A stretch of 64,000 bases of DNA from the IMG/VR virus record IMGVR_UViG_3300020438_000007, positions 62,001 to 126,000 of that record; one strand, given 5' to 3'. This document shows, in pieces, positions 1,774-64,000 of this stretch. The notes beneath the pieces are model-generated. The model searched no databases. It was given only the letters and a program-made list of their open reading frames with translations, and was not told where the DNA came from. The first letter of the stretch is position 1, and the number at the start of each line of letters is the position of its first letter. A program made the translations under genes and the position numbers.

Positions 1774-1912
1774 CTCTCTTTGGATAATAAACTTCTACAT
1801 AAGATTCACACTTAGGACATGAAAGATTAGTTACGAAACTATACTCCTCAGCAAAGGGACAATCAGTATCCCCTCCCCATATGAGTTCAGTGTTGCAGTG
1901 CCAACAATTCAT
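1766..1912 (-). CDS. 48-aa Zn-ribbon-like micro-protein (not in ORF track)
   Basis: Hand translation MNCWHCNTELIWGGDTDCPFAEEYSFVTNLSCPKCESYVEVYYPKRDE; CxxC...CxxC; stop/start overlaps with both neighbours. Confidence 0.75.
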   Translation of the reverse strand: MNCWHCNTELIWGGDTDCPFAEEYSFVTNLSCPKCESYVEVYYPKRDE

Positions 1913-1992
1913 TTCTTAAAAACTCCAAGTTTTGCTAGTAGATATACTGACAATATTGTCCAGAATACAACTTCTAATCCTATATTATTCAT
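1909..1992 (-). CDS. 27-aa single-TM micro-protein (not in ORF track)
   Basis: Hand translation MNNIGLEVVFWTILSVYLLAKLGVFKK; ATGA overlaps at both ends. Confidence 0.65.
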   Translation of the reverse strand: MNNIGLEVVFWTILSVYLLAKLGVFKK

Positions 1993-2456
1993 AGACCTAC
2001 TATTTTTCTTTGTCTTTCAAAGTAGTTGTGGAGCAACCATGAACTACTATTTTTCTTATCGGTTCCGCCTACACCAAACTCCATCTCTACTCTGGGATCA
2101 TCACCAAACTGATCCATCTCTGGTGTATTACCTTTACCACGATCACCTCCATTGGCAAAGACAACAGTTTGTGCGATCTCTAAACATCTTTCGATGGCAT
2201 GACACGCAGAACCGTGTTCATCATCCTCTACGGTAATCACGGCATCAACAACATCCAAGTGACGAATGATCTCTGCACGTTCTTTCCATGACATGAAGTA
2301 TTGTCCTTTCTTCTTAGTCAACCATTCTTCCGTGTTTAACCCCACTACTAGGTAATTTGTAAGATCTTTTGCTTGCTCGAAGTAAGCAATGTGGCCACTA
2401 TGAAGAGGATCAAAACCGCCTGTGACTAGAGTAAGTATTCTTTTCTTAGTCATCAA
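1989..2456 (-). CDS. Cytidylyltransferase-like nucleotidyltransferase (HxGH family)
   Basis: VTGGFDPLHSGH, LVVGLN, ERAEII, FANGGDR motifs. Confidence 0.88.
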   Translation of the reverse strand: MMTKKRILTLVTGGFDPLHSGHIAYFEQAKDLTNYLVVGLNTEEWLTKKKGQYFMSWKERAEIIRHLDVVDAVITVEDDEHGSACHAIERCLEIAQTVVFANGGDRGKGNTPEMDQFGDDPRVEMEFGVGGTDKKNSSSWLLHNYFERQRKIVGL

Positions 2457-2610
2457 ACTCTCCTTTTCTAGCTAAATATACTTTAACATTATTATAATGC
2501 TTTTCTATACTTTGTGCAAACCAATTTGCTGGATCTCTTGATTCAAAAACTTTCATCTGTGATTCAGAAAATATGCCGTTGTCTGTCCAACATACAATGT
2601 AACGTGTCAT
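2446..2610 (-). CDS. 54-aa hypothetical protein (not in ORF track)
   Basis: Hand translation MTRYIVCWTDNGIFSESQMKVFESRDPANWFAQSIEKHYNNVKVYLARKGEFDD; ATGA overlap with gp43 stop; fills the gap exactly. Confidence 0.7.
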   Translation of the reverse strand: MTRYIVCWTDNGIFSESQMKVFESRDPANWFAQSIEKHYNNVKVYLARKGEFDD

Positions 2611-5111
2611 GCGAAGAAGGATTCAAGTGTATTCTTACGTTCGGTCTCCCAACCGATACAATCTAGAATAACCTTTACAGGTTCTAGGAATGATTTGCTA
2701 AATTGCAATTCATAGTCTACATGTTTATCTAGGTCGAGTTCAGTTGGGAAATCTTGAATGAAAGATATAACATTTTCGTGCATCCAATTAGGTGTCTTCA
2801 AGTAACAGAACTTGATCTTCTCACCATTATTAATCGCGGCATACTTATTGTCTATCCCCTTCTTCTTTGTATAGTGATTGTATAGGATGGCACCACGAAC
2901 ATGAATAGGACAACCCTTGTTATACATGTCAGAAGATGACTTCCACTTCTCCACGTTGGATACACTACGAGGGAATGCCACTTCTTCTGGTGGTAATGAT
3001 TTGAATTTAGTTCGACACTCCTCAATATAATCAATCACTTCATCCTCTGTTCCATTCATCAGTAAAGTAAAAGCATCTTTCAAGAACTTACGACATGGTG
3101 CAGGCGTAGAAGTTTTGATTGCTTCAATACCCATGATCTTAAGTTTAGCATCTTCATATCTAACTCCCTCACTATCCCATACGTTTAGAATATATCTTTT
3201 CTTTGCAGTCCATATACCAGTTGAAGCGATGTTCTCTCGCTTCATGATCATCTTTTGGTCGTAGGCGTTAACGTAGTCTGCCAGTTCTTGGTAAGAACTT
3301 TCAATATAAGGTTCAAGTTCCATCTCACAGACTTTATTAAGGAACGTGACAATGCCTTCAGTAGTTTTCTCTCTCCCCTCGTATACACGGTCAACCAAAG
3401 GACCCATATGCAAGTAAATAGAATCGGTATCACTAGCAATAACATAATCAATATCTTTTGTTTTTAAAATGGTATTCATCTTCTGGTTTATTTTATTCTC
3501 AATCCATCGGATTGATACTTGTCCAGATAGGGTAATGGCTTCTGCGTTCGCAAGTTTATAATAGCGAAAGTATTGATTACCAATAGCACCATAAGCACTG
3601 TTAAGGGCAATCTTCTTGGACATTTGGACGTTGTTGCATCTTGCAATCTCCTTTTCAAGTTCTTTAGTAGGGGTTTTTTCATAGGCTTGTTTTGCTTTGA
3701 TCATCCTCTTCTTGAAGATGACACGTTCATTATACATCTTCTCCATCAACTCAGGTAGGAAACCTTTCTTGTCCTTACTAAACATTGCACCGTTGGCACA
3801 AACTGCATATTCCTTATACATCTCAAAAGTAATCTCTTGATTGAGAAGTTTATCCACTGTGGCACTAGGATGTCTCTTTTCCTGTAATGTTTCTGGGGAG
3901 ATATTGTATTGCATAATCAAATGCGGATACAGTGAGTTCAAGTCAAAAGATACCACCCATTCATATCTACCAGGCTTAGGTTCTTTGACATACGCACCAG
4001 CATATTTCTCATCTTTCTTGTTACGATCCTTCTGTGGGATCACAATGTTTTTCTTTTTGAGATAGTTGTAGATGATCGCATCCCATGTACGAACTTGAAA
4101 CGCAACATCAGTAAAGTTGATCTTTGCATCATATGCTCGAGTACAACATAGGTCAATCAACTTGAGTTTATCCTCAAGACGGTCAACCAGTTCCACGTCA
4201 ACGATGTTGTAATCTACAAACTTCTGCCAGTTCTTTGTATAGAACTCACGGAATGTATCAAACTCACTGTGATCCAACTTCTTTTGACCGAGTTCCACCA
4301 TGGCAATATGATCCAATTTGAAACTCTCTTGGTTTGAAGTTGCAGGAGATTTCTTGTATAGATCCAAGTAATCAATTACAGATACGCCTGCAATATCAAA
4401 GACGATATTTGCACGACCCATTATTGTGATTTCATTCTTTCTTACAATGCCCCAAGGAGAGAACTTCTTGGCCACCTTCTCACCCATGAGACGTTCTACC
4501 CTACCCACAAGGTAAGGGATATCATACAGTTCACAGTTCCACCCTGTAATGACCTCAGGCGTGTGTTTCTGCCACCAGTCTAGGAATGTATAGATCAGAC
4601 CTTCCTCGTTGTGGCAGTCAATGTAAGAGTAGTTCTTTCTGTTTGGATTGGTCTGGTATGGACGTGATCCAAAGGTAGTAATTCTTTTAGTATTGTAATC
4701 CTGTATTGTGATCAGTAGAAGTTCTTCTGCAACATTAAAGACATCAGGGAAACCACTCTCCGCAGCAACCTCGATGTCAATAGTAACTAGATTAATTTTG
4801 CTTAGATCAAACTTGATATCATCCTCTGGATAATTATCAGAGATATATTGATGTACATATCTCTCATTACCAAAAATATTAAAGTTTTGTACTTGCGAAT
4901 ACTTGTCGATAAACTGCCTACAATCCTTGATTGTGCCAGGTTTGATCGGCTCTACAGATTGACCGTCAAGAGTCTTCCACTTACTTCTTTTCTTTGTAGG
5001 TACATAAAAGGTAGGATGAAACTCCTCCCTGTCACTAAAATGTTTTCCATTTTCATATCCCCTGACCAACATACTGTTGCCGATCTGGAAAACATTAGTG
5101 TAGAATTTCAT
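2607..5111 (-). CDS. gp43: Family B DNA polymerase gp43
   Basis: DIEV exonuclease motif, SFDLNSLYP, KIALNSAYG, SDTDS; 834 aa with no visible intein. Confidence 0.98.
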   Translation of the reverse strand: MKFYTNVFQIGNSMLVRGYENGKHFSDREEFHPTFYVPTKKRSKWKTLDGQSVEPIKPGTIKDCRQFIDKYSQVQNFNIFGNERYVHQYISDNYPEDDIKFDLSKINLVTIDIEVAAESGFPDVFNVAEELLLITIQDYNTKRITTFGSRPYQTNPNRKNYSYIDCHNEEGLIYTFLDWWQKHTPEVITGWNCELYDIPYLVGRVERLMGEKVAKKFSPWGIVRKNEITIMGRANIVFDIAGVSVIDYLDLYKKSPATSNQESFKLDHIAMVELGQKKLDHSEFDTFREFYTKNWQKFVDYNIVDVELVDRLEDKLKLIDLCCTRAYDAKINFTDVAFQVRTWDAIIYNYLKKKNIVIPQKDRNKKDEKYAGAYVKEPKPGRYEWVVSFDLNSLYPHLIMQYNISPETLQEKRHPSATVDKLLNQEITFEMYKEYAVCANGAMFSKDKKGFLPELMEKMYNERVIFKKRMIKAKQAYEKTPTKELEKEIARCNNVQMSKKIALNSAYGAIGNQYFRYYKLANAEAITLSGQVSIRWIENKINQKMNTILKTKDIDYVIASDTDSIYLHMGPLVDRVYEGREKTTEGIVTFLNKVCEMELEPYIESSYQELADYVNAYDQKMIMKRENIASTGIWTAKKRYILNVWDSEGVRYEDAKLKIMGIEAIKTSTPAPCRKFLKDAFTLLMNGTEDEVIDYIEECRTKFKSLPPEEVAFPRSVSNVEKWKSSSDMYNKGCPIHVRGAILYNHYTKKKGIDNKYAAINNGEKIKFCYLKTPNWMHENVISFIQDFPTELDLDKHVDYELQFSKSFLEPVKVILDCIGWETERKNTLESFFA

Positions 5112-5368
5112 GCAGTTGCCAGTTTCAAATAAGAATCAATGAGTTCTCGGTGGGGTTCCACCAATGTTACTATTTTATCAGAACATATCATAATTTCAAC
5201 GTCGTCTGTTACCTTCTTTAACCAAGGCGACATATCATCACCCTCAAGTTCATAAGGTGATACAAGTTTGCAGTTTGGATCTCCAATATCAACAGCACCG
5301 ACTTCCTCTATCTTTGAGATAATAACGGCGCCATTAACTAGGATTAGTATCTTTACTTCCTGTTCCAT
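5108..5368 (-). CDS. Conserved hypothetical protein (possible Sm-like fold)
   Basis: KILILVNGAVIISKIEEV start; coupled to gp43 by ATGA overlap. Confidence 0.6.
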   Translation of the reverse strand: MEQEVKILILVNGAVIISKIEEVGAVDIGDPNCKLVSPYELEGDDMSPWLKKVTDDVEIMICSDKIVTLVEPHRELIDSYLKLATA

Positions 5369-5669
5369 AAATTTTAGTCTCGTAAGATTGTTTTACCATA
5401 GGTTTTGGTTCTACTATCGCAACGACCCAGCTGGGATCAATAGATATCTTTTTCTCATCAGATAAAGGCATCCAAGGATAGTATTGTACACTGTACTGTG
5501 TTTCTTCTTCCTCTTTTCCTTCTGTAAGTAACACAGGTGATTCAACCAACTTACAACAGTAAGCGTTTTCAAGAACGATGAAGATAGGTTTTTGATCCTC
5601 ATCTACAAGTTCTTTCACATCTGCGATGACTTCTTCGTTAGATTTTAGTAGAACTAGTTTGACGGTCAT
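5334..5669 (-). CDS. Conserved hypothetical protein (possible Sm-like fold)
   Basis: KLVLLKSNEEVIADVKEL...YPWMP...VVAIVEP. Confidence 0.65.
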   Translation of the reverse strand: MTVKLVLLKSNEEVIADVKELVDEDQKPIFIVLENAYCCKLVESPVLLTEGKEEEETQYSVQYYPWMPLSDEKKISIDPSWVVAIVEPKPMVKQSYETKIYGTGSKDTNPS

Positions 5670-5691
5670 TGCACCAGTATATAGTTTGTAA

Positions 5692-5762
5692 AGCGGATGG
5701 GTGGTATTGCACCACCGTTTACAAGTTGGAAACCTGTCGTAATACTTTTATACGACACCCGC
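5692..5762 (-). tRNA. tRNA-Gly(UCC) with non-canonical D- and T-loops
   Basis: Folds as GCGGGTG/CATCCGC acceptor stem, GTA/TAC D-stem, ACAGG-TTTCCAA-CTTGT anticodon arm, GGTGG-TGCAATA-CCACC T-arm; U73 discriminator; no encoded CCA. Confidence 0.85.
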
Positions 5763-5764
5763 AT

Positions 5765-6000
5765 GAAAGACCATCTGCCCGACTCTCTTGAGTTGCATCT
5801 TAGGTCTTGAAAGAAAGAGGGGAGGTTGGGTTCCTGTGTACCAACAAAGAATGGGCATTACTACAGAGTAAATACATTCTTGCCTGAGACCCGACTGGTA
5901 AGTCGATTCTGCTTTCGCAGCAGCACCACCTGTGTCTCATCACCTTAACCAGCAGTATGCCAGTAAGTTTATTCAGTCACTCCCAATGTTGCGTCCAACA
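5765..6000 (-). ncRNA. Structured cyanophage ncRNA, manA/CfrI-like
   Basis: ORF-free; GGGAG(5984-5980)/CTCCC(5824-5820) closing stem; hairpins TGTTG-GACG-CAACA and GCTGC-GAAA-GCAG; own sigma70 promoter. Family name is from memory, not a search. Confidence 0.6.
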
Positions 6001-53272: not shown

Positions 53273-54064
53273 TTAGACGTAGGTGATTTTAACGAGTCCT
53301 CCTCCACCTTGACCGCCCTGTCCGCAACAACTACTTCCACAGTAGTTACTGTTTGCACCTTGTCCGCCGTGTCCATAGGGAACTGTCCAACAACCACATC
53401 TCATCCAACACTGTCTTTGTCCATATGAAACACCAAGAGTTCCGATGAATGGAGCACCTGTTGGTCTACCTTCGTTATAGTAACAGTGACAGTTGAATCC
53501 GTCAGGTCTGTATGAGTTACCACCGTGGTTGCCCATTCCGAAGTCTCCTCCGTGAGCGCCAGGTTGCATACAGCAAGTATGGAATTCAGAATAACAGTTT
53601 GCAGACCAGTCACCAGTTGCACAACCTCTAACACCACCTAAGGCACAGAAGTTAGATAGGTTATATCCATTTACATAGGAGTTACATCCGCAACATCCTG
53701 TACACTCTCTAGAACAACATCTATAAACACCAGCAGCACAGACACTGTATTGGCAACCAGACTTAGTACTAATAGTTTTAGTATTATAGTACCCTCCTCC
53801 AGCACCATGCCAGTTTTGACATCTGTTACATGAACATGCACCGTGTCCGTTACCTCCAGATCCCCATATCTCAAATGTAGCTCGTGTTACACCCGTTGGA
53901 ACTGTCCAAAGGCAACAACAGCCAGGTGTACAGTAACATGGATGTCCATAGACCCATTTTACACACCAGTTTGAGAAAGAACCCGCTTGAACCTTTGATG
54001 CTGGAATACTTCCATCCTCAAATGTCGAGGCATTAATTTGTTTATAACTTGAGTAAGTAGCCAT
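53273..54064 (-). CDS. Cys-rich Gly-rich fibre-tip-like protein, paralogue 3
   Basis: About 30 Cys in 263 aa; WTVPTGV..EIWGSGG...GGQGGGGLVKITY. Confidence 0.75.
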   Translation of the reverse strand: MATYSSYKQINASTFEDGSIPASKVQAGSFSNWCVKWVYGHPCYCTPGCCCLWTVPTGVTRATFEIWGSGGNGHGACSCNRCQNWHGAGGGYYNTKTISTKSGCQYSVCAAGVYRCCSRECTGCCGCNSYVNGYNLSNFCALGGVRGCATGDWSANCYSEFHTCCMQPGAHGGDFGMGNHGGNSYRPDGFNCHCYYNEGRPTGAPFIGTLGVSYGQRQCWMRCGCWTVPYGHGGQGANSNYCGSSCCGQGGQGGGGLVKITYV

Positions 54065-54073
54065 TTCTTCCCC

Positions 54074-54868
54074 TTAGAAGTATGTAATTTTGACGAGACC
54101 GCCACCGCCAGTACCGCCTTGTCCGCAGCACCCACCACAATATGTAGTCATAGCGCTCTGTCCGCCGTGACCGTAAGGTACGATCCAGCAACCACAACGA
54201 ATCCAACATTCTCTAATAGATTGAGTAACTTGTGTACCAATCAACGGTGCAGAAGTAGGTCTATGACCATAGTGGTAACAGTGACACCAACCTCTATAAG
54301 TATCATGTCTTGATGAAGACCAAGTACTGGTCTGGTTGCCCATTCCGAAGTCTCCGTTGTTTGAAGTAGGACCTAAACAACAGCAATTTTGTGCGTTACA
54401 AGCAGTTGACCAACTTGGGTTAGCGTTTCCACGGTTTCCACCTTTGGCACAGAAGTTAGATAAGTTGTATCCATTTACATAAGATGAACAACCTGTACAT
54501 CCATAACACTCTCTAGAGAGACATGGATAAACACCAGCCGCACAAATACTGTAAGAACAACCACCATTGGTTGTAATCATTTTGGAGTTGTAGTATCCTC
54601 CAGAAGCACCATGATAGTGCTGACATCTGTTACATGAACATGCACCAGTACCATTTCCTCCAGCACCCCACATCTGAATCCACATGTTTCCAACCCCAGT
54701 AGGGGCTGACCAGTTACAGCAACAGCCTGGTGAACAACGGCAGTTTGTACCGAATACCCATTTTACGCCGTAACTTTCGTTAGGAGATCCACTGAAACTT
54801 CCAGCGTCAAGGCTATTGTCCTCTAAGGAATCTCCACTGATTTTTTTGTATGATGAATAACTTGCCAT
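54074..54868 (-). CDS. Cys-rich Gly-rich fibre-tip-like protein, paralogue 2
   Basis: About 27 Cys in 264 aa; same scaffold. Confidence 0.75.
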   Translation of the reverse strand: MASYSSYKKISGDSLEDNSLDAGSFSGSPNESYGVKWVFGTNCRCSPGCCCNWSAPTGVGNMWIQMWGAGGNGTGACSCNRCQHYHGASGGYYNSKMITTNGGCSYSICAAGVYPCLSRECYGCTGCSSYVNGYNLSNFCAKGGNRGNANPSWSTACNAQNCCCLGPTSNNGDFGMGNQTSTWSSSRHDTYRGWCHCYHYGHRPTSAPLIGTQVTQSIRECWIRCGCWIVPYGHGGQSAMTTYCGGCCGQGGTGGGGLVKITYF

Positions 54869-54880
54869 TTTTGTTTAATC

Positions 54881-55666
54881 CTAGACGTAGGTAATTCGTA
54901 CAACACCAGAGCCGCCTTGGCCGCCCTGACCACAACAACTACTTCCGCAGTATGTAGTCTGAGCACCTTGACCACCTGTCGCATAAGGAGCAGTCCAACA
55001 ACCACATCTCATCCAACATTGTTCCAGCTGCACCTCGGTTCCAGCTGATAGGAACGGAGCTCCTGATCCTTCTTCACTTGTAACCGCACCAGTACAGTGA
55101 CAGTTCCAGTGACCTGACCAACCTTTTTGGTGAGGAGCCATTGCGAAGTCTCCACCCCATGTTCCAGGCGATGCACAGCACCAGTGTCTAGATGTACATC
55201 TAATTGACCAGTCGGGGTTTGCACAACCTCTTGCACCACCAATGGCACAGAAGCCACTTAAGTTGTAACCGTTAACGTATGAAGAACATCCATCACATCC
55301 GTTACACTCTCTTGAACAGCACCTGTAAACACCACCAGCACATACAGAATATGAGCAACCAGCAGCGGTACTGATTGTTTTAGTATTGTATGCACCTCCA
55401 GCAGCACCTTGATAGTGATGACATCTGTTACATGAACATGCACCATGTCCGTTACCACCAGCACCCCAGATTTCTAGGGTTAGTTTACCTACACCTGCTG
55501 GGACAGTCCAGTTACAGCAACAGCCAGGTGTGCAATAACATGGATGTCCATAGAACATCTTGACACAATAGTCAGGGGTGCCACCCGCCGCCAGCTTCGA
55601 GATTGGGATGGTTCCCGAAGCGATTTGGTCGGATCTTACTTTTTTATATGATCTATAGTTGGCCAT
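54881..55666 (-). CDS. Cys-rich Gly-rich fibre-tip-like protein, paralogue 1
   Basis: About 29 Cys in 261 aa; same scaffold. Confidence 0.75.
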   Translation of the reverse strand: MANYRSYKKVRSDQIASGTIPISKLAAGGTPDYCVKMFYGHPCYCTPGCCCNWTVPAGVGKLTLEIWGAGGNGHGACSCNRCHHYQGAAGGAYNTKTISTAAGCSYSVCAGGVYRCCSRECNGCDGCSSYVNGYNLSGFCAIGGARGCANPDWSIRCTSRHWCCASPGTWGGDFAMAPHQKGWSGHWNCHCTGAVTSEEGSGAPFLSAGTEVQLEQCWMRCGCWTAPYATGGQGAQTTYCGSSCCGQGGQGGSGVVRITYV

Positions 55667-60604: not shown

Positions 60605-61063
60605 TTAACTAGCCCTATTGTTGAATACTTTCCAAAGGGATCCATTCCAAATAAAAGTCACTGACGCACCCGAAACGTCCATGATGAAAGGAGAAGATTC
60701 TTTAACTAAATGTCCGTTTTCAAAACTGTATATTGATGTAACGTTAATAGGATGAATGCTAAAGAAGTTAGCAAAATCTTCGATCCATACCCAGTCACCA
60801 ACCGCACGAGGAGTTGGCATGGCAAGATCAAATCCATCAGGACTATTTTGGGAATCAACAGTATATTTTTGGTTTGTACTCAATGGATAAGTTCCAGATA
60901 CAAACGTCCATCTTGCTCTAGCAAGTTCAAATCCGCCAGGAGTAGCCCCGTCGTGTACAACAGCCGTATTCTTATCTGTGTCTACTGTTATCTCGGCTAG
61001 AGCTCCAGTAAAGTTAAAGTGTTCAGCTGTAGTTCCTTTTCTAAATTGAACCTGCTTGGTCAT
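60605..61063 (-). CDS. Mtd-N-like fibre attachment domain protein
   Basis: VQFRKGTTAEH..F.GALAEITVDTDK....VHDG.T.GG N-terminal motif. Confidence 0.7.
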   Translation of the reverse strand: MTKQVQFRKGTTAEHFNFTGALAEITVDTDKNTAVVHDGATPGGFELARARWTFVSGTYPLSTNQKYTVDSQNSPDGFDLAMPTPRAVGDWVWIEDFANFFSIHPINVTSIYSFENGHLVKESSPFIMDVSGASVTFIWNGSLWKVFNNRAS

Positions 61064-61096: not shown

Positions 61097-61104
61097 TATT
61101 TATA
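61097..61104 (-). promoter_or_regulatory. T4-type late promoter TATAAATA
   Basis: Exact consensus upstream of 60605..61063. Confidence 0.78.
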
Positions 61105-61108
61105 GGAT

Positions 61109-64000
61109 TTAGATTATGACAACATAAGTTCTACCTTCTTCGATGACCGCATACTCTGTTTCGGCATTACCAAAGGTGTTAACTTGACCAATTCCAACGT
61201 AAGTTGCCCGAGCGAGAGATTCCTTAGATCCAGCAAGTCCTTTGAATCTTCCTTGACTCTCGTACCCAGCAAAGGTAAAGGATTCGACAGCTGATCCACT
61301 TGTCTGGTAAAGAACTGCAACACCAATACCAATCGAAGGTGTGAAATCGACAAATGGGTGTACAAGAGGTGTATTGGAGAATGTAAATGTTCCAGATGTG
61401 CCTGGATCTTTGTCGTCTCCGTAGTATCCAAATACTTGGATTTGTTTTGTAGCACCAACACCAGAGATTGTAGTAATGCCAGATGTGCCTGGATCTCTGT
61501 CGTCTCCATAGTATCCGTAAACCTGATTGATTTCGGTAAGTGCAGATGCACCCTTGAGATCGAAGAGGACTGTGCCTTCCAGATCGTCCGCTGTAAATCT
61601 GACAATAGATGAACCAGAGAAGGTAGCAGTACCAACACCAATTTCTCTGAAGAATCCTTGTTCTCTTGCACTTCCAGAGAATGTAACAATACCAGAACCA
61701 GTGAAAGCTGGAGTGTAATCGATGTCTGGATGTGTAAGTTCTCCAGATAATGTGAATGTACCAGATGGAACGAAGTCTTGGAATACTTGGAAGTATCTTG
61801 TTTCTGCAACACCTGTGATATCTGTAAGAATTGATCTTGCAGCAGATGGTTCGACGGTTGCCTCTGCAGCACCACCAAGAATACTGAATGTACCAGAACC
61901 TGTTGGAGACAGTCTGATACCAGTAACAACTCTTTGATCGTTGCTGAGTGTAAGAGTTCCAGATCCGTTGAACTGGCGTTGACGGAAGGCAACACTTTCT
62001 CCAGACAGTGTAATTGTTGCAGTATCTTCTGGAGTCTGAGCAGAGAAGGATTCTTCTGCCGTTCCGTTGAATATAGAAGTTCCAGCGACAAGTTCTGCAG
62101 CAGCTGTTGCTTCTGCAATACCACCAACTGCGAATAGAGAACCAGAACCAACTTCGACGGATGATGTTGCTTCGTCTTGACCAGAACCACTGTAAGTAAA
62201 TGTGCCGCCGCCAGATGCTTGAACAGATGTTCTCTCGATTGTGAGAATACCACCTTCCTGACGAATAGTGATACCACCAGATGTGCCTGGATCTTTGTCG
62301 TCTCCATAGTATCCAAATACAGAAATTGGTCTTGCTTCTGCACCAGATGTCTGGAAGTCGAATAGGAGAGATCCAGCACCAAATTCTGTTGCAGGGATAA
62401 ATCTCTCTTTTGCACCAAACTCAACACCGTTAAGATCGCCAATTCCATCATCACCAATTTGACCATTGGCCTCAGTACCAATACCGAGAATGTAGATCGT
62501 ACCATCAGTAAGAATAGGAGCGTTGGTACGACCGATTGCCTTACCGTTAAGACTGATAATACCAGAGGTAGGATATTTGGGTACGAACCTTGTGGTAACA
62601 ATGCCAGGATCTCCGTACTCTCCTCCAGTACCGCCAGGCAAGAAGGTAAAACCTGTTTCGATACCAATGTTCCTTTCGATACCATAATGAGGTGTGAAGT
62701 CGATTTGTGGGTGATTGAGTTCTCCACTGAGTCGTAGAGTTGCCTTCTGAGATTGAGAAGCAAAGGCTGCACTGAGATCTGTATATCCACCACCAAAGAT
62801 GTGTAGGTAAGTTCCTTCTGGAGGATCGAAGCTCGATCTCTCGATAGATGCTCCAGAGAATGTAGTAATACCAGAAGCGGGTGGAACGATAATCCTTCTG
62901 TAGGTTGTAAACCCAACAGCTTGAGTTTGTTGAAGGGTGATATTTCCAGATCCAACAAAGTCTTTGGTGACACTCTCGTTTGCAGTATCGTAGATATCGA
63001 ATAGAACAGTTCCTTCTGGAGTCTGAGCAATGTATCTTTCTTCTGCACCACTAACGAAGTCGAATAGAGATGTTGTACTACTTGCAACTGCAACTCTCTC
63101 GACTCCAGTACCAGATACGATAAGTGAACCAGAACCAACCCAACTTGGGATGAACTGAGTAATCGTGTCCGAGATCTGTGGGAATACAAGTTTTCCGTAT
63201 GGGAAACGAGATTCTGTTGGTGCTGGCTCTGTAATGAATCCAGCATCTTCGTAACCCTGATTGATTTCTTGTGAATTGAAACCAGTGTAGTGTGGATATA
63301 AGAATTGATCGTATGCAGGTCCGCCAACAGAACTGATGCCAAGTTCACCGTAGTCTTGAGACACAGTGTTGTCATCAAATCCGATACCATATTGACTAGT
63401 CTTATCGAAGGAAGGTAATATCTCAACACCACCAGATCCTTGGTCGTATGTGAGACCACCGTTACTAAAGAGAACGTCTTGAGAGTATCTGTTGAGTTCG
63501 TCATCAAATGTTTCAGTACCAGAAGCCTGTCCAAGTATGTTGAGTCCGAATCCAAAGCTTGGGTCTCCAAGAATACCACCGTAGTTTTCGTTCTCAGTAC
63601 CAAAGAGTATAGAAGACTCATTGTAAGAATCTGTATTCTTCTCACCAGATGCCGCACCATTGACGAATAATGTTCCGCCAAACTCGTTTTCTTTGTGTTG
63701 TATAACTCTTGCGTATGTCTGATTCTCTTCTCTACCCTGACTGAAGGTTCCTGTACCAACACCAGAGATATGTGGTGCAAATACCTGACCAGCAGTACCA
63801 CCAAGATATGAGTAGTCTCCCTGTAAGTATGCCTTGGTACTGGATTCAACTGCACCACCGATACTGAATAATGTACCAGATCCTTCTGGTATGACTGGTG
63901 TAATAGACTCGTTACCAGTACCATTAATTGTAAATTGACCTTCTTCACCAAATACTGTATGTTGTGGAGCCTGTGATAACCATAGTTCTCCAGATATGAA
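61109..64000 (-). CDS. Giant Gly/Ser/Thr-rich virion structural protein, 5'-truncated by the window (>964 aa)
   Basis: Hand translation shows the frame of 61109..63364 continues without a stop to 64000 (FISGELWLSQAP...); repeated GSG-T(F/L) and GYYGDD.DPGTSG motifs. Confidence 0.85.
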   Translation of the reverse strand, partial: FISGELWLSQAPQHTVFGEEGQFTINGTGNESITPVIPEGSGTLFSIGGAVESSTKAYLQGDYSYLGGTAGQVFAPHISGVGTGTFSQGREENQTYARVIQHKENEFGGTLFVNGAASGEKNTDSYNESSILFGTENENYGGILGDPSFGFGLNILGQASGTETFDDELNRYSQDVLFSNGGLTYDQGSGGVEILPSFDKTSQYGIGFDDNTVSQDYGELGISSVGGPAYDQFLYPHYTGFNSQEINQGYEDAGFITEPAPTESRFPYGKLVFPQISDTITQFIPSWVGSGSLIVSGTGVERVAVASSTTSLFDFVSGAEERYIAQTPEGTVLFDIYDTANESVTKDFVGSGNITLQQTQAVGFTTYRRIIVPPASGITTFSGASIERSSFDPPEGTYLHIFGGGYTDLSAAFASQSQKATLRLSGELNHPQIDFTPHYGIERNIGIETGFTFLPGGTGGEYGDPGIVTTRFVPKYPTSGIISLNGKAIGRTNAPILTDGTIYILGIGTEANGQIGDDGIGDLNGVEFGAKERFIPATEFGAGSLLFDFQTSGAEARPISVFGYYGDDKDPGTSGGITIRQEGGILTIERTSVQASGGGTFTYSGSGQDEATSSVEVGSGSLFAVGGIAEATAAAELVAGTSIFNGTAEESFSAQTPEDTATITLSGESVAFRQRQFNGSGTLTLSNDQRVVTGIRLSPTGSGTFSILGGAAEATVEPSAARSILTDITGVAETRYFQVFQDFVPSGTFTLSGELTHPDIDYTPAFTGSGIVTFSGSAREQGFFREIGVGTATFSGSSIVRFTADDLEGTVLFDLKGASALTEINQVYGYYGDDRDPGTSGITTISGVGATKQIQVFGYYGDDKDPGTSGTFTFSNTPLVHPFVDFTPSIGIGVAVLYQTSGSAVESFTFAGYESQGRFKGLAGSKESLARATYVGIGQVNTFGNAETEYAVIEEGRTYVVII
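61392..62320. repeat. Three ~44-bp near-identical direct repeats (61392-61435, 61479-61522, 62277-62320)
   Basis: ccagatgtgcctggatctYtgtcgtctccRtagtatcc..; copies 1 and 3 are identical at 43/44 positions; encode GYYGDD(K/R)DPGTSG. Confidence 0.85.

What the first reader, a model, noticed from the sequence alone, without database searches (positions are those of the whole stretch)
61114..64000. A +1 reading frame stays open for >960 codons inside the giant structural gene
The track's 945-aa ORF (61114-63951) is the +1 frame of the real gene. By hand it is also open to the window edge, and it ends 5 nt from the real stop. In about 540 codons I translated, all of roughly 20 NTA codons are followed by a C/T-starting codon; Val/Ile/Leu before purines always use NTT/NTC, although most codons here begin with a purine. 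The neighbouring fibre, gp18 and gp23 genes freely use GTA-AAC, GTA-GGT and GTG-ACT, and their +1-frame ORFs in the track are at most ~130 aa. TAA/TAG occur in the +2 frame, so this is not general trinucleotide avoidance. This points to gene-specific selection: an overprinted ~100-kDa protein, a programmed frameshift upstream giving an alternative C-terminus, or protection against polar termination after slippage. The +1 product looks compositionally like frameshift noise (Leu/Val/Ser/Gln-rich), so function is unproven.
Basis: partly seen in the sequence, partly recalled or inferred. Interest (0 to 1): 0.8.

Follow-up and report, generated by a model that had tools for sequence, protein, structure and literature searches.

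The report
Phage gene purged of out-of-frame stops
A giant tail-region gene of marine cyanophages chooses its synonymous codons so that almost no stop codon appears in its two unused reading frames. This is the reverse of what is usually proposed for genes. It is kept by selection across the whole gene family, and neither unused frame shows any sign of encoding a protein.

Summary
On the minus strand, the real gene (stop at 61109-61111) runs off the window edge. Its +1 frame is open for 961 codons (61117-63999).

- **+1 frame:** 1 stop, against 20.3±2.7 in synonymous shuffles and 33.1±4.5 with the genome's own context-dependent codon usage.
33 stops against 72-80 expected, with a 398-codon stop-free run (61227-62420).
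- **Specificity:** none of the other ~40 ORFs in the window shows this, and neither do the antisense frames.
- **Conservation:** the full gene is about 1553 codons. Its relatives include S-SSM7, S-SSM6a, Sf-FS3 and more than 60 metagenomic homologues down to about 40% identity. All keep the purge from the end of the N-terminal ~300-residue domain to the 3' end.
- **What is avoided:** exactly TAA, TAG and TGA. TGG is not avoided. Codon choice tracks the next codon as that codon changes between homologues.
- **Not coding:** synonymous divergence is not suppressed, the +1 sequence is no better conserved than +2, single stops break the +1 ORF in some lineages, and there is no slippery site.

An overprinted protein or programmed frameshift is therefore not supported. 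The best reading is selection against release of out-of-frame ribosomes. Why this would benefit only this gene remains unknown.

The parts
61109..64000 (-). 3' 963 codons plus the TAA stop of the giant structural-region gene (frame 0). The full gene is about 1553 codons and continues beyond the window edge. It is a homologue of S-SSM7 SSSM7_110.
   Evidence: The full gene is seen in L004:4954-9612, the contig that holds the window.
61114..63999 (-). +1 frame with no stop for 961 codons. Its only stop, TAA at 61114-61116, is 5 nt upstream of the real stop. The full run is 1259 codons in L004.
61227..62420 (-). +2 frame with no stop for 398 codons. All three sense frames are open here.
   Evidence: (0 stops against 19.8 expected).
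62550..63050 (-). Second +2 stop-free run, 167 codons.
   Evidence: list of +2 stop coordinates.
63345..63947 (-). Island where +2 stops occur at near-normal density (19 stops) while +1 stays stop-free. This is the fastest-evolving part of the protein.
61131..61226 (-). Cluster of four +2 stops in the last ~40 codons. The first lies 115 nt before the real stop, a position conserved in most homologues.
61097..61104 (-). TATAAATA box (T4-type late-promoter consensus) 5 nt after the giant gene's stop. It is conserved in homologues.
   Evidence: That this motif is the late-promoter consensus is from general knowledge of T4-like phages.
60605..61063 (-). Downstream 152-aa tail protein with an Mtd_N domain. 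It is in frame 0 relative to the giant gene and has normal off-frame stop density.

Best explanation
**What is shown.** The alternative frames are not genes. In this gene family each out-of-frame TAA, TAG or TGA on the sense strand is individually selected against. The purge is achieved only through synonymous codon choice that depends on the next codon:
- NTT or NTC replaces NTA before a purine.
- NTG is avoided before A.
- NNC replaces NNT before AA, AG and GA.

Only a ribosome with a release factor tells these three triplets from TGG or TAC in a fixed phase. So the selective agent is most likely ribosomes that are out of frame, whether through frameshift errors or through internal mis-initiation. 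The +1 frame offers about 130-140 NTG codons per zone. Such ribosomes are kept from terminating inside the gene body and run on to the gene's end.

**The benefit I think most likely (inferred, weakly).** The zone starts exactly where the N-terminal ~300-residue domain ends. Premature release downstream of that point would produce fragments that carry an intact N-terminal (attachment) domain but lack the distal part. Such fragments could spoil virion assembly. A product with a long hydrophobic junk tail would more probably misfold and be removed.
For: **The purge exists and is specific to this gene**
-.

**It targets exactly the three stop codons** (family-wide counts)
- NTA|A: 37 against 265 expected.
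- NTA|G: 18 against 342 expected.
- NTG|A: 4 against 69 expected.
- NTG|G (TGG): 97 against 89 expected, so not avoided.
- In the last 400 codons, the NNT share of NNY codons is 0.12, 0.10 and 0.08 before AA, AG and GA. It is 0.59-0.87 in every other context except before TT, where it is 0.14 (the T-run avoidance seen throughout this genome).

**Selection is ongoing**
- At 207 aligned sites where the next codon's first base differs between homologues, NTA is used in 26% of Y contexts and 0.7% of R contexts.
- The purge persists at dS of 0.5 to more than 1 and down to about 40% protein identity.
- It is present in cultured isolates: S-SSM7 and Sf-FS3 (z = -6.0 and -6.8, while its neighbouring long gene gives +0.6 and -0.1).

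**It is confined to the sense strand**
- Antisense frames have z between -1.8 and +1.5.

**There is no constraint on the alternative-frame protein**
-.

**Selection acts per site rather than on ORF integrity**
- Single +1 stops at different positions in many lineages do not relax the purge downstream.

**The onset is a step at a domain boundary**
- The zone begins at the end of the N-terminal domain in all close and mid-distance homologues.
- A ~170-residue domain inserted before that boundary in some homologues keeps normal stop density.
Against: **No direct evidence.** Nothing here shows that out-of-frame ribosomes exist on this mRNA.

**The poison-fragment benefit is pure inference.**
- The fold is unknown: both AlphaFold runs failed, with pLDDT of 26 and 28.
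- The protein's place in the virion is unknown.
- In many phage fibres folding starts at the C-terminus. In that case truncated chains would be harmless.

**Patterns that fit poorly.**
- Islands with near-normal +2 stop density sit in the middle of the zone (codons ~600-840 and ~1080-1140). An upstream +2 purge is pointless if the aim is to reach the end.
- A distant homologue, L107, has a +1 stop-rich patch inside the same repeat type.

**Gene specificity is unexplained.** Other very long genes next door do not have the signature: the fibre gene (1479 aa) and, in S-SSM7, a 2506-aa gene. They are rich in Gly, Thr and Ser like this one.

**It runs against the usual expectation.** The ambush hypothesis holds that off-frame stops are neutral or useful.
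Confidence: 0.5

Rival explanations
1. Overprinted or trans-frame protein. The +1 frame, and blocks of +2, would be translated on purpose, from an internal start or after a programmed frameshift near codon ~300. The product would be a ~1250-residue alternative polypeptide rich in Leu, Val and Ser, whose exact sequence matters little.
For: - The +1 ORF is 1257-1266 codons long in several lineages. It starts at a conserved place and ends within a few nucleotides of the main stop.
- Newly overprinted viral proteins often evolve fast and look compositionally odd (general knowledge).
Against: - dS is not suppressed, although every frame-0 third-position change alters the +1 second position.
- +1 identity equals +2 identity, and equals the N-terminal control.
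- The ORF is broken by single stops at varying positions in L006, L009, L014-L018, L025, L027, L042, L074-L079 and Sf-FS3, and by many in L096. The purge still continues downstream.
- There is no conserved slippery site, no enrichment of slippery heptamers and no Rfam element.
- Pfam finds nothing. The product is 40% L+V+I+F+M.
- Among 5.8 billion database proteins, the +1 product appears only in 7 singleton proteins. The three whose contigs I inspected came from indel-ridden long-read assemblies.
- This reading would also need a second overlapping product in +2.
Confidence: 0.1
2. Tolerance of frameshift mutations (evolvability). Open alternative frames would let indel mutants, or indel plus compensating indel, still make full-length protein. 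That would give a fast route to new sequence in a host-recognition protein. The analogy is the 'barrier'-free stretch of T4 rIIB and what has been proposed for PE_PGRS genes.
For: - The gene lies among tail-fibre genes and has a hypervariable middle part.
- In indel-ridden long-read assemblies the gene indeed stays as 700-900-codon ORFs, while the neighbouring fibre gene is chopped into small pieces.
- The PE_PGRS proposal is in PMC13328622.
Against: - No frame-shifted homology between homologues. Alternative-frame translations against frame-0 proteins gave no hit.
- 96% of aligned DNA is in phase. Out-of-phase pieces are at most 31 nt long and about 50% identical.
- Alternative-frame 6-mers and 7-mers in 119 family proteins do not exceed the control.
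- No frameshifted variant appears in short-read assemblies among more than 400 family proteins.
- The purge is strongest in the most conserved parts and weakest in the hypervariable part. This is the reverse of what evolvability predicts.
- There are no homopolymer or simple-repeat tracts to drive indels. TTTT is avoided, and all DNA repeat spacings are multiples of 3.
Confidence: 0.15
3. Protection of the message or of downstream expression. Out-of-frame ribosomes would have to keep travelling so that the long mRNA stays covered, giving stability and transcription-translation coupling, or so that downstream genes are not affected by polarity.
For: - The mRNA is about 4.7 kb.
- In the S-SSM7-like group the start codon is TTG, and the start lies ~20 nt after a conserved hairpin with a U-run. 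This suggests sparse in-frame ribosome loading.
- The +1 frame offers ~130-140 NTG codons where ribosomes could load.
- Off-frame stops reappear only at the very end of the gene.
Against: - The downstream gene has its own TATAAATA box 5 nt after the stop.
- Cyanobacteria lack Rho (general knowledge), so classical polarity is unlikely.
- Equally long neighbouring genes lack the signature.
- Homologues with ATG starts have it too.
- The +2 islands stop -1-shifted ribosomes mid-gene.
Confidence: 0.1
4. Passive by-product of amino-acid composition, codon bias, repeat structure or a mutational context bias.
For: - The protein is rich in Gly, Thr and Ser, so only Val, Ile, Leu and Met codons can create +1 stops.
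- The sequence contains degenerate ~20-25-residue repeats.
Against: - Two nulls that keep the protein sequence reject it. One also keeps the gene's codon usage, and the other uses the genome's junction-dependent usage.
- The adjacent fibre gene, of like composition, is normal.
- TGG, TAC and TAT in the same phases are not avoided.
- Antisense frames are normal.
- The N-terminal part of the same gene is normal.
- The repeats are too diverged to have copied the property.
- Codon choice covaries with the next codon.
Confidence: 0.02

Closest known systems
Ambush hypothesis / hidden (off-frame) stop codons (Seligmann & Pollock 2004; tested in PMC2996987, PMC3700767, PMC5909447)
   Same: Both concern context-dependent synonymous codon choice that sets the number of out-of-frame TAA, TAG and TGA in a coding sequence. 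In both, out-of-frame ribosomes are the presumed agent.
   Different: The sign is reversed: here off-frame stops are purged, not enriched. The effect is limited to one gene family and starts at a domain boundary. Its size is very large (1.2% against 33% NTA use), whereas ambush effects are weak genome-wide trends.
Scarcity of off-frame stops in the Gly-rich PE_PGRS genes of Mycobacterium tuberculosis (PMC13328622)
   Same: Both are long, Gly-rich, repetitive surface-related genes with few out-of-frame stops. Frameshift tolerance has been proposed as the consequence.
   Different: In PE_PGRS the authors themselves find the depletion to be largely a passive result of high GC. Here GC is about 43-45%, the depletion survives composition-preserving nulls, and no frameshifted variants or scars were found.
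Overprinted (overlapping) genes of phages and viruses
   Same: A very long same-strand ORF in an alternative frame of a known gene, conserved as open in relatives.
   Different: Synonymous variation is not reduced and the alternative-frame sequence is not conserved. The start is not conserved, and the ORF is broken sporadically in some lineages. Two alternative frames are affected at once.
Programmed ribosomal frameshifting in phage tail and capsid genes (lambda gpG/gpGT type, T7 10A/10B)
   Same: A tail-region gene whose alternative frame is open downstream of a fixed point, so a frameshift would give a product with another C-terminus.
   Different: There is no conserved slippery heptamer or stimulator, and frame 0 stays open and conserved to its own stop. 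The alternative 'extension' would be ~1250 residues of unconstrained sequence.
Frameshift 'barriers' in T4 rIIB (Crick, Brenner et al. 1961; general knowledge)
   Same: The same concept applies: off-frame nonsense triplets decide how far a shifted reading can proceed.
   Different: In rIIB this was a property seen in laboratory mutants of a dispensable segment. Here barriers are absent from a conserved, constrained protein, and natural selection maintains that absence.

Membership tests
Overprinted (overlapping) protein-coding gene | Alternative-frame ORF kept intact in relatives | tested here: inconclusive
   It is open for 1218-1266 codons in many homologues. In others it is cut by one to several stops at varying positions, and in the 38%-identity homologues (L096/L104) it is open only over the last ~540 codons.
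Overprinted (overlapping) protein-coding gene | Reduced synonymous divergence of the host frame across the overlap | tested here: not met
   dS in the zone against the N-terminal part: 0.53 against 0.58 (S-SSM7), 0.58 against 0.49 (L006), 1.01 against 1.27 (L014).
Overprinted (overlapping) protein-coding gene | Alternative-frame amino-acid sequence conserved beyond what the host frame imposes | tested here: not met
   +1 identity is about equal to +2 identity (for example 0.629 against 0.616). It also matches the N-terminal control, where +1 is closed (0.636 against 0.617).
Overprinted (overlapping) protein-coding gene | Evidence of expression of the alternative-frame product | not testable with these tools
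Programmed ribosomal frameshift site | Conserved slippery sequence at the point where the alternative frame opens | tested here: not met
   The codon alignment of the boundary shows no conserved shift-prone motif. The AGG-GG repeats seen in the window's phage are not conserved. In-frame X XXY YYZ heptamers number 0-2 per zone, below the shuffle mean.
Programmed ribosomal frameshift site | Downstream RNA stimulator or a known frameshift element | tested here: not met
   Rfam scan of L004:4000-10500 at E up to 0.1 gave no match. No de novo structure search was done.
Frameshift-tolerant contingency gene (indel-driven variation) | Indel-prone simple repeats or homopolymer tracts | tested here: not met
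   TTTT windows: 1 against 31 expected. Other runs are at or below expectation. Direct repeats are degenerate and all in phase.
Frameshift-tolerant contingency gene (indel-driven variation) | Natural variants or scars that use the alternative frames | tested here: not met
   Searches found none. The only alternative-frame proteins are 7 singletons; the three I inspected lie on error-ridden long-read contigs. Read-level population data could not be examined.
Ambush-type selection on off-frame stops | Off-frame stop count departs from a null that keeps protein and codon usage | tested here: met
   z = -6.9 (+1) and -7.2 (+2) in the window. z runs from -4.5 to -12 across homologues.
Ambush-type selection on off-frame stops | Direction: enrichment of off-frame stops | tested here: not met
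   The direction is the opposite, a depletion.

The most novel reading that the evidence does not exclude
This mRNA is translated in more than one frame at a substantial rate, by an unrecognised mode of frame-promiscuous translation. That could be diffuse frameshifting or widespread internal initiation. The phage would depend on those ribosomes, or on their full-length trans-frame products, reaching the 3' end. This would be a new kind of recoding whose only genomic trace is a sense strand free of stops in all three frames.
Probability: 0.12. Interest if true: 0.95.

Novelty: categorically new. Interest (0 to 1): 0.8.

Why it matters
- **It contradicts a textbook view.** Off-frame stop codons are treated as neutral or mildly useful. 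Here, in a low-GC phage, a whole gene family has removed them from 1250 codons in one frame and from hundreds of codons in the other. It did so only by synonymous, neighbour-dependent codon choice, and has kept this through saturating synonymous divergence.
- **It implies a cost nobody has described.** Out-of-frame ribosomes, or frame-shifted genomes, must matter enough to shape 3.8 kb of sequence. In at least one protein, premature release appears to be worse than making a long junk tail.
- **It is testable.** Cultured phage-host pairs exist: S-SSM7 with Synechococcus WH8109, and Sf-FS3 with WH8102.
- **It affects annotation.** Such genes yield long spurious alternative-frame ORFs and chimeric proteins in error-prone assemblies. 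Seven such proteins are already in public protein sets.

Tried and rejected
**Simple explanations for the open frames**
1. Strong NNT bias in third positions: rejected. Third-position A is 28-31%.
2. General avoidance of the A|R junction or of TA: rejected.
3. Copying of a stop-free repeat unit: rejected. The repeats are degenerate and all in phase.

**Use of the alternative frames in evolution or in databases**
4. Frame switching between homologues: alternative-frame against frame-0 blastp found nothing. My first phase count at HSP starts was confounded by upstream non-coding sequence. Redone per alignment column, it was negative.
5. Natural frameshift variants: short proteins P0110 and P0087 and the +1-product hits P0121 and P0123 looked promising. 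All lie on long-read contigs (three labelled '_pilon', P0087's a 6x contig). Neighbouring genes are broken on three of them, while P0087's contig shows only one frame switch inside the gene itself. I treat all four as assembly artefacts.

**Other sequence signals**
6. Specific avoidance of T-runs, Shine-Dalgarno-like motifs or off-frame start codons: TTTT and GGAGG avoidance is genome-wide, and off-frame starts are not avoided.

**Identifying the protein**
7. AlphaFold2 on the last 700 and the last 330 residues gave pLDDT of 26 and 28, which is unusable, so I ran no fold search.
8. PDB profile search, Pfam, NCBIfam and the ESM Atlas gave nothing. PHROGs matched only residues 3-194, to a family of unknown function.

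**Tools and literature**
10. Three literature searches found no earlier report of this gene or phenomenon.
11. An antisense explanation: antisense frames are normal.
Full report
**What is there**

The region holds the 3' 963 codons of a very long minus-strand gene. Frame 0 has its stop, TAA, at 61109-61111 and is open to the window edge. It encodes a protein rich in Gly, Thr, Ser, Ile and Phe, with no Met and no Cys.

The nearest cultured relative is Synechococcus phage S-SSM7, a T4-like cyanomyovirus of 233 kb, at 83.7% DNA identity. Its homologue SSSM7_110 (1529 aa, 'hypothetical') lies between baseplate genes and tail-fibre genes.

The window itself is found at 100% identity in IMG/VR contig 3300020438_000007 (230,739 bp). 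There the whole gene is L004:4954-9612, 1553 codons.

**Checking the observation**

The +1 frame is open from 63999 down to 61117. It ends with TAA at 61114-61116, 5 nt before the real stop.

Of 31 NTA codons, 30 are followed by a pyrimidine-starting codon, although 66% of codons start with a purine. A-ending codons with another middle base are followed by purines 56-68% of the time.

| Null model | +1 stops expected | Longest +1 run | +2 stops expected | Longest +2 run |
|---|---|---|---|---|
| Synonymous shuffle within the gene | 20.3±2.7 (min 10 of 5000) | max 421 | 72.4±5.5 | max 158 |
| Codons drawn from the other 37 window ORFs, conditional on the next codon's first two bases | 33.1±4.5 (min 16 of 3000) | max 282 | 79.5±6.4 | max 118 |
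| Observed | 1 | 961 | 33 | 398 (61227-62420) |

The other ~40 ORFs of at least 200 codons in the window have |z| of 3.2 or less, against -6.9 and -7.2 here. The antisense frames are normal.

**Conservation across the family**

Two scans of IMG/VR gave more than 60 distinct loci with homologues from 100% down to 29% identity.

- **+1 frame.** In every homologue of about 40% identity or more, the +1 frame carries a normal stop density (about 1 per 20 codons) through the N-terminal ~300 codons. It then has essentially no stops to the 3' end, with runs of 635-1266 codons.
- **+2 frame.** It has stop-free blocks of 170-710 codons towards the 3' end.
- **S-SSM7.** It has 13 +1 stops in the first 810 nt and none in the next 1257 codons.
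- **Sf-FS3** (isolate, 47% identity). z = -6.0 and -6.8, while its neighbouring long gene gives +0.6 and -0.1.
- **S-SCSM2R** (25% identity). A weaker signal, z = -3.9 and -4.0.
- **More distant metagenomic homologues.** L096 and L107 show it only in blocks.
- **Other genes.** No other ORF of at least 300 codons in any fetched locus shows it: 127 ORFs, minimum z of -3.9 (+1) and -4.0 (+2).

**What exactly is avoided**

Family-wide, downstream of codon 320, Val, Ile and Leu use NTA in 1.2% of cases before a purine and in 33% before a pyrimidine. The same comparison gives 36% against 47% in the N-terminal part, and 16% against 25% in the fibre gene.

| Codon junction in the zone | Observed | Expected |
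|---|---|---|
| NTA then A | 37 | 265 |
| NTA then G | 18 | 342 |
| NTG then A | 4 | 69 |
| NTG then G (TGG) | 97 | 89 |

In the last 400 codons, the T share of NNY codons is 0.12, 0.10 and 0.08 before AA, AG and GA. It is 0.59-0.87 before all other dinucleotides except TT. The TT exception reflects a genome-wide avoidance of T-runs.

At 207 aligned sites where the next codon's first base differs among homologues, NTA use is 26% in pyrimidine contexts and 0.7% in purine contexts. So the target is exactly TAA, TAG and TGA in the two unused sense phases, and the selection is ongoing.

**Is an alternative frame coding?**

The evidence says no.

- Synonymous divergence is the same inside and outside the zone: 0.53 against 0.58 for the S-SSM7 pair, and 1.01 against 1.27 for L014. 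This holds even though every third-position change alters the +1 second position.
- +1 amino-acid identity equals +2 identity. Both equal what the N-terminal part shows at like DNA identity.
- Many lineages carry one or a few +1 stops at differing places, and the purge goes on downstream of them. That fits per-site selection, not maintenance of one ORF.
- The boundary has no conserved slippery motif. Slippery heptamers are not enriched. Rfam finds nothing.
- The +1 product has no Pfam match and is 40% L+V+I+F+M.
- Searching the +1 product against 5.8 billion proteins returned only 7 singletons. The three I inspected are from long-read '_pilon' contigs whose neighbouring genes are shredded by indel errors.

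**Is it used by evolution through indels?**

I found no sign of it.

- There is no cross-frame homology.
- 96% of aligned DNA columns are in phase. The out-of-phase pieces are at most 31 nt long and about 50% identical.
- Alternative-frame 6-mers and 7-mers in 119 family proteins do not exceed the control.
- There are no indel-prone tracts.
- The purge is most complete in the most conserved parts (last 400 codons, dN 0.07-0.09). For +2 it is weakest in the hypervariable part (codons ~600-900, dN 0.26-0.43). This is the reverse of an evolvability design.

**Most likely mechanism**

Only ribosomes with release factors separate TAA, TAG and TGA from TGG, TAC and TAT in a given phase on one strand. 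I therefore infer selection acting through ribosomes that are out of frame, by frameshift errors or by internal mis-initiation. The +1 frame has ~130-140 NTG codons per zone and +2 has only 5-13. This matches the stronger purge in +1.

Why their release should be harmful only in this gene is not shown. The step-like onset at the end of the N-terminal domain is the main clue. A ~170-residue domain inserted before that point in some homologues keeps normal stop density. From this I suggest the following:

- Fragments with an intact N-terminal domain but a missing distal part are damaging, perhaps as assembly poisons.
- Products with long hydrophobic junk tails are not damaging.

This last step is inference only. 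The fold could not be predicted (pLDDT 26 and 28), and no family or solved structure matches.

Two points argue against simple polarity:
- A TATAAATA box lies 5 nt after the stop.
- The signature is absent from neighbouring long genes.

Two features are not explained by any 'must reach the end' model:
- the +2 islands in the middle of the zone;
- the +1 stop-rich patch in L107.

**Comparison with what is known**

- The phenomenon is the mirror image of the ambush hypothesis.
- It differs from the scarcity of off-frame stops in PE_PGRS genes, which their authors attribute largely to GC content. GC here is 43-45%.
- It fails the defining tests for an overprinted gene and for a programmed frameshift site.
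- Three literature searches found no prior description.

**Limits**

- The family counts pool related sequences. They are supported by the site-wise covariation test and by per-gene shuffles, not by a phylogenetic model.
- The protein's function and virion location are unknown.

Noticed in passing
L004:4876-4953 (just beyond the window edge, upstream of the giant gene): A 13-bp hairpin followed by a U-run (4904-4933) sits ~20 nt before the giant gene's start. It is preceded by a CTAAATAT box. The hairpin is kept by compensating changes in all homologues examined. It could be a terminator for the upstream gene, a 5' stabiliser or an attenuator.
   Followed up: partly
L004:4954 and homologues: The giant gene appears to start with TTG in the S-SSM7-like group, including the window's phage, but with ATG in more distant homologues.
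   Followed up: partly
window 61097-61104, and 7404, 29615, 30612, 32342, 53161: All six exact TATAAATA boxes (T4-type late-promoter consensus) in the window lie on the minus strand, the strand of the genes. One sits 5 nt after the giant gene's stop and is conserved in homologues. The count itself (6 against 3.9 expected) is not significant.
   Followed up: partly
window 60605-61063 (-): The 152-aa tail protein just downstream carries the N-terminal domain of the Bordetella-phage major tropism determinant (Pfam Mtd_N, E = 4.6e-13). I did not check whether a diversity-generating retroelement exists in this phage.
   Followed up: no
whole window (tested on 6 long genes): TTTT runs are strongly avoided relative to synonymous shuffles in all genes tested (z from -2 to -6.3), and GGAGG is mildly avoided. 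This is a genome-wide trait, not specific to the giant gene.
   Followed up: partly
window 61112-64000 (-), and the family: The protein has no Met and no Cys in 963 residues. Family-wide, Met is 0.2% and Cys about 0%, against 1.3% and 0.7% in the neighbouring fibre protein.
   Followed up: partly
L109, L111, L112 (ENA '_pilon' long-read contigs); proteins P0110, P0121-P0126: Because the alternative frames are open, indel errors in long-read assemblies do not break this gene. Instead they yield 700-1100-residue chimeric or alternative-frame 'proteins' that now sit in public protein collections. The adjacent fibre gene in the same contigs is cut into many small ORFs.
   Followed up: yes
L035, L036, L027, L042 (alignment columns between L002 codons ~292 and ~293): Some homologues carry an extra ~170-residue domain inserted just before the start of the stop-free zone. 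It has normal off-frame stop density.
   Followed up: partly
window 54077-54874 (-): One of three tandem ~266-codon paralogous ORFs (53276-55666) shows a mild shortage of +2 stops: 13 against 22.3 expected, z = -3.2. This is the largest deviation among the window's other genes.
   Followed up: no
L114 (S-SCSM2R, PQ898602.1) 1847-5956: The distant homologue of the giant gene is annotated 'TolB' in that record, and the 335-aa upstream gene is annotated 'tail fiber rope protein'. Neither name could be supported or refuted here, since Pfam and NCBIfam gave no hit.
   Followed up: partly
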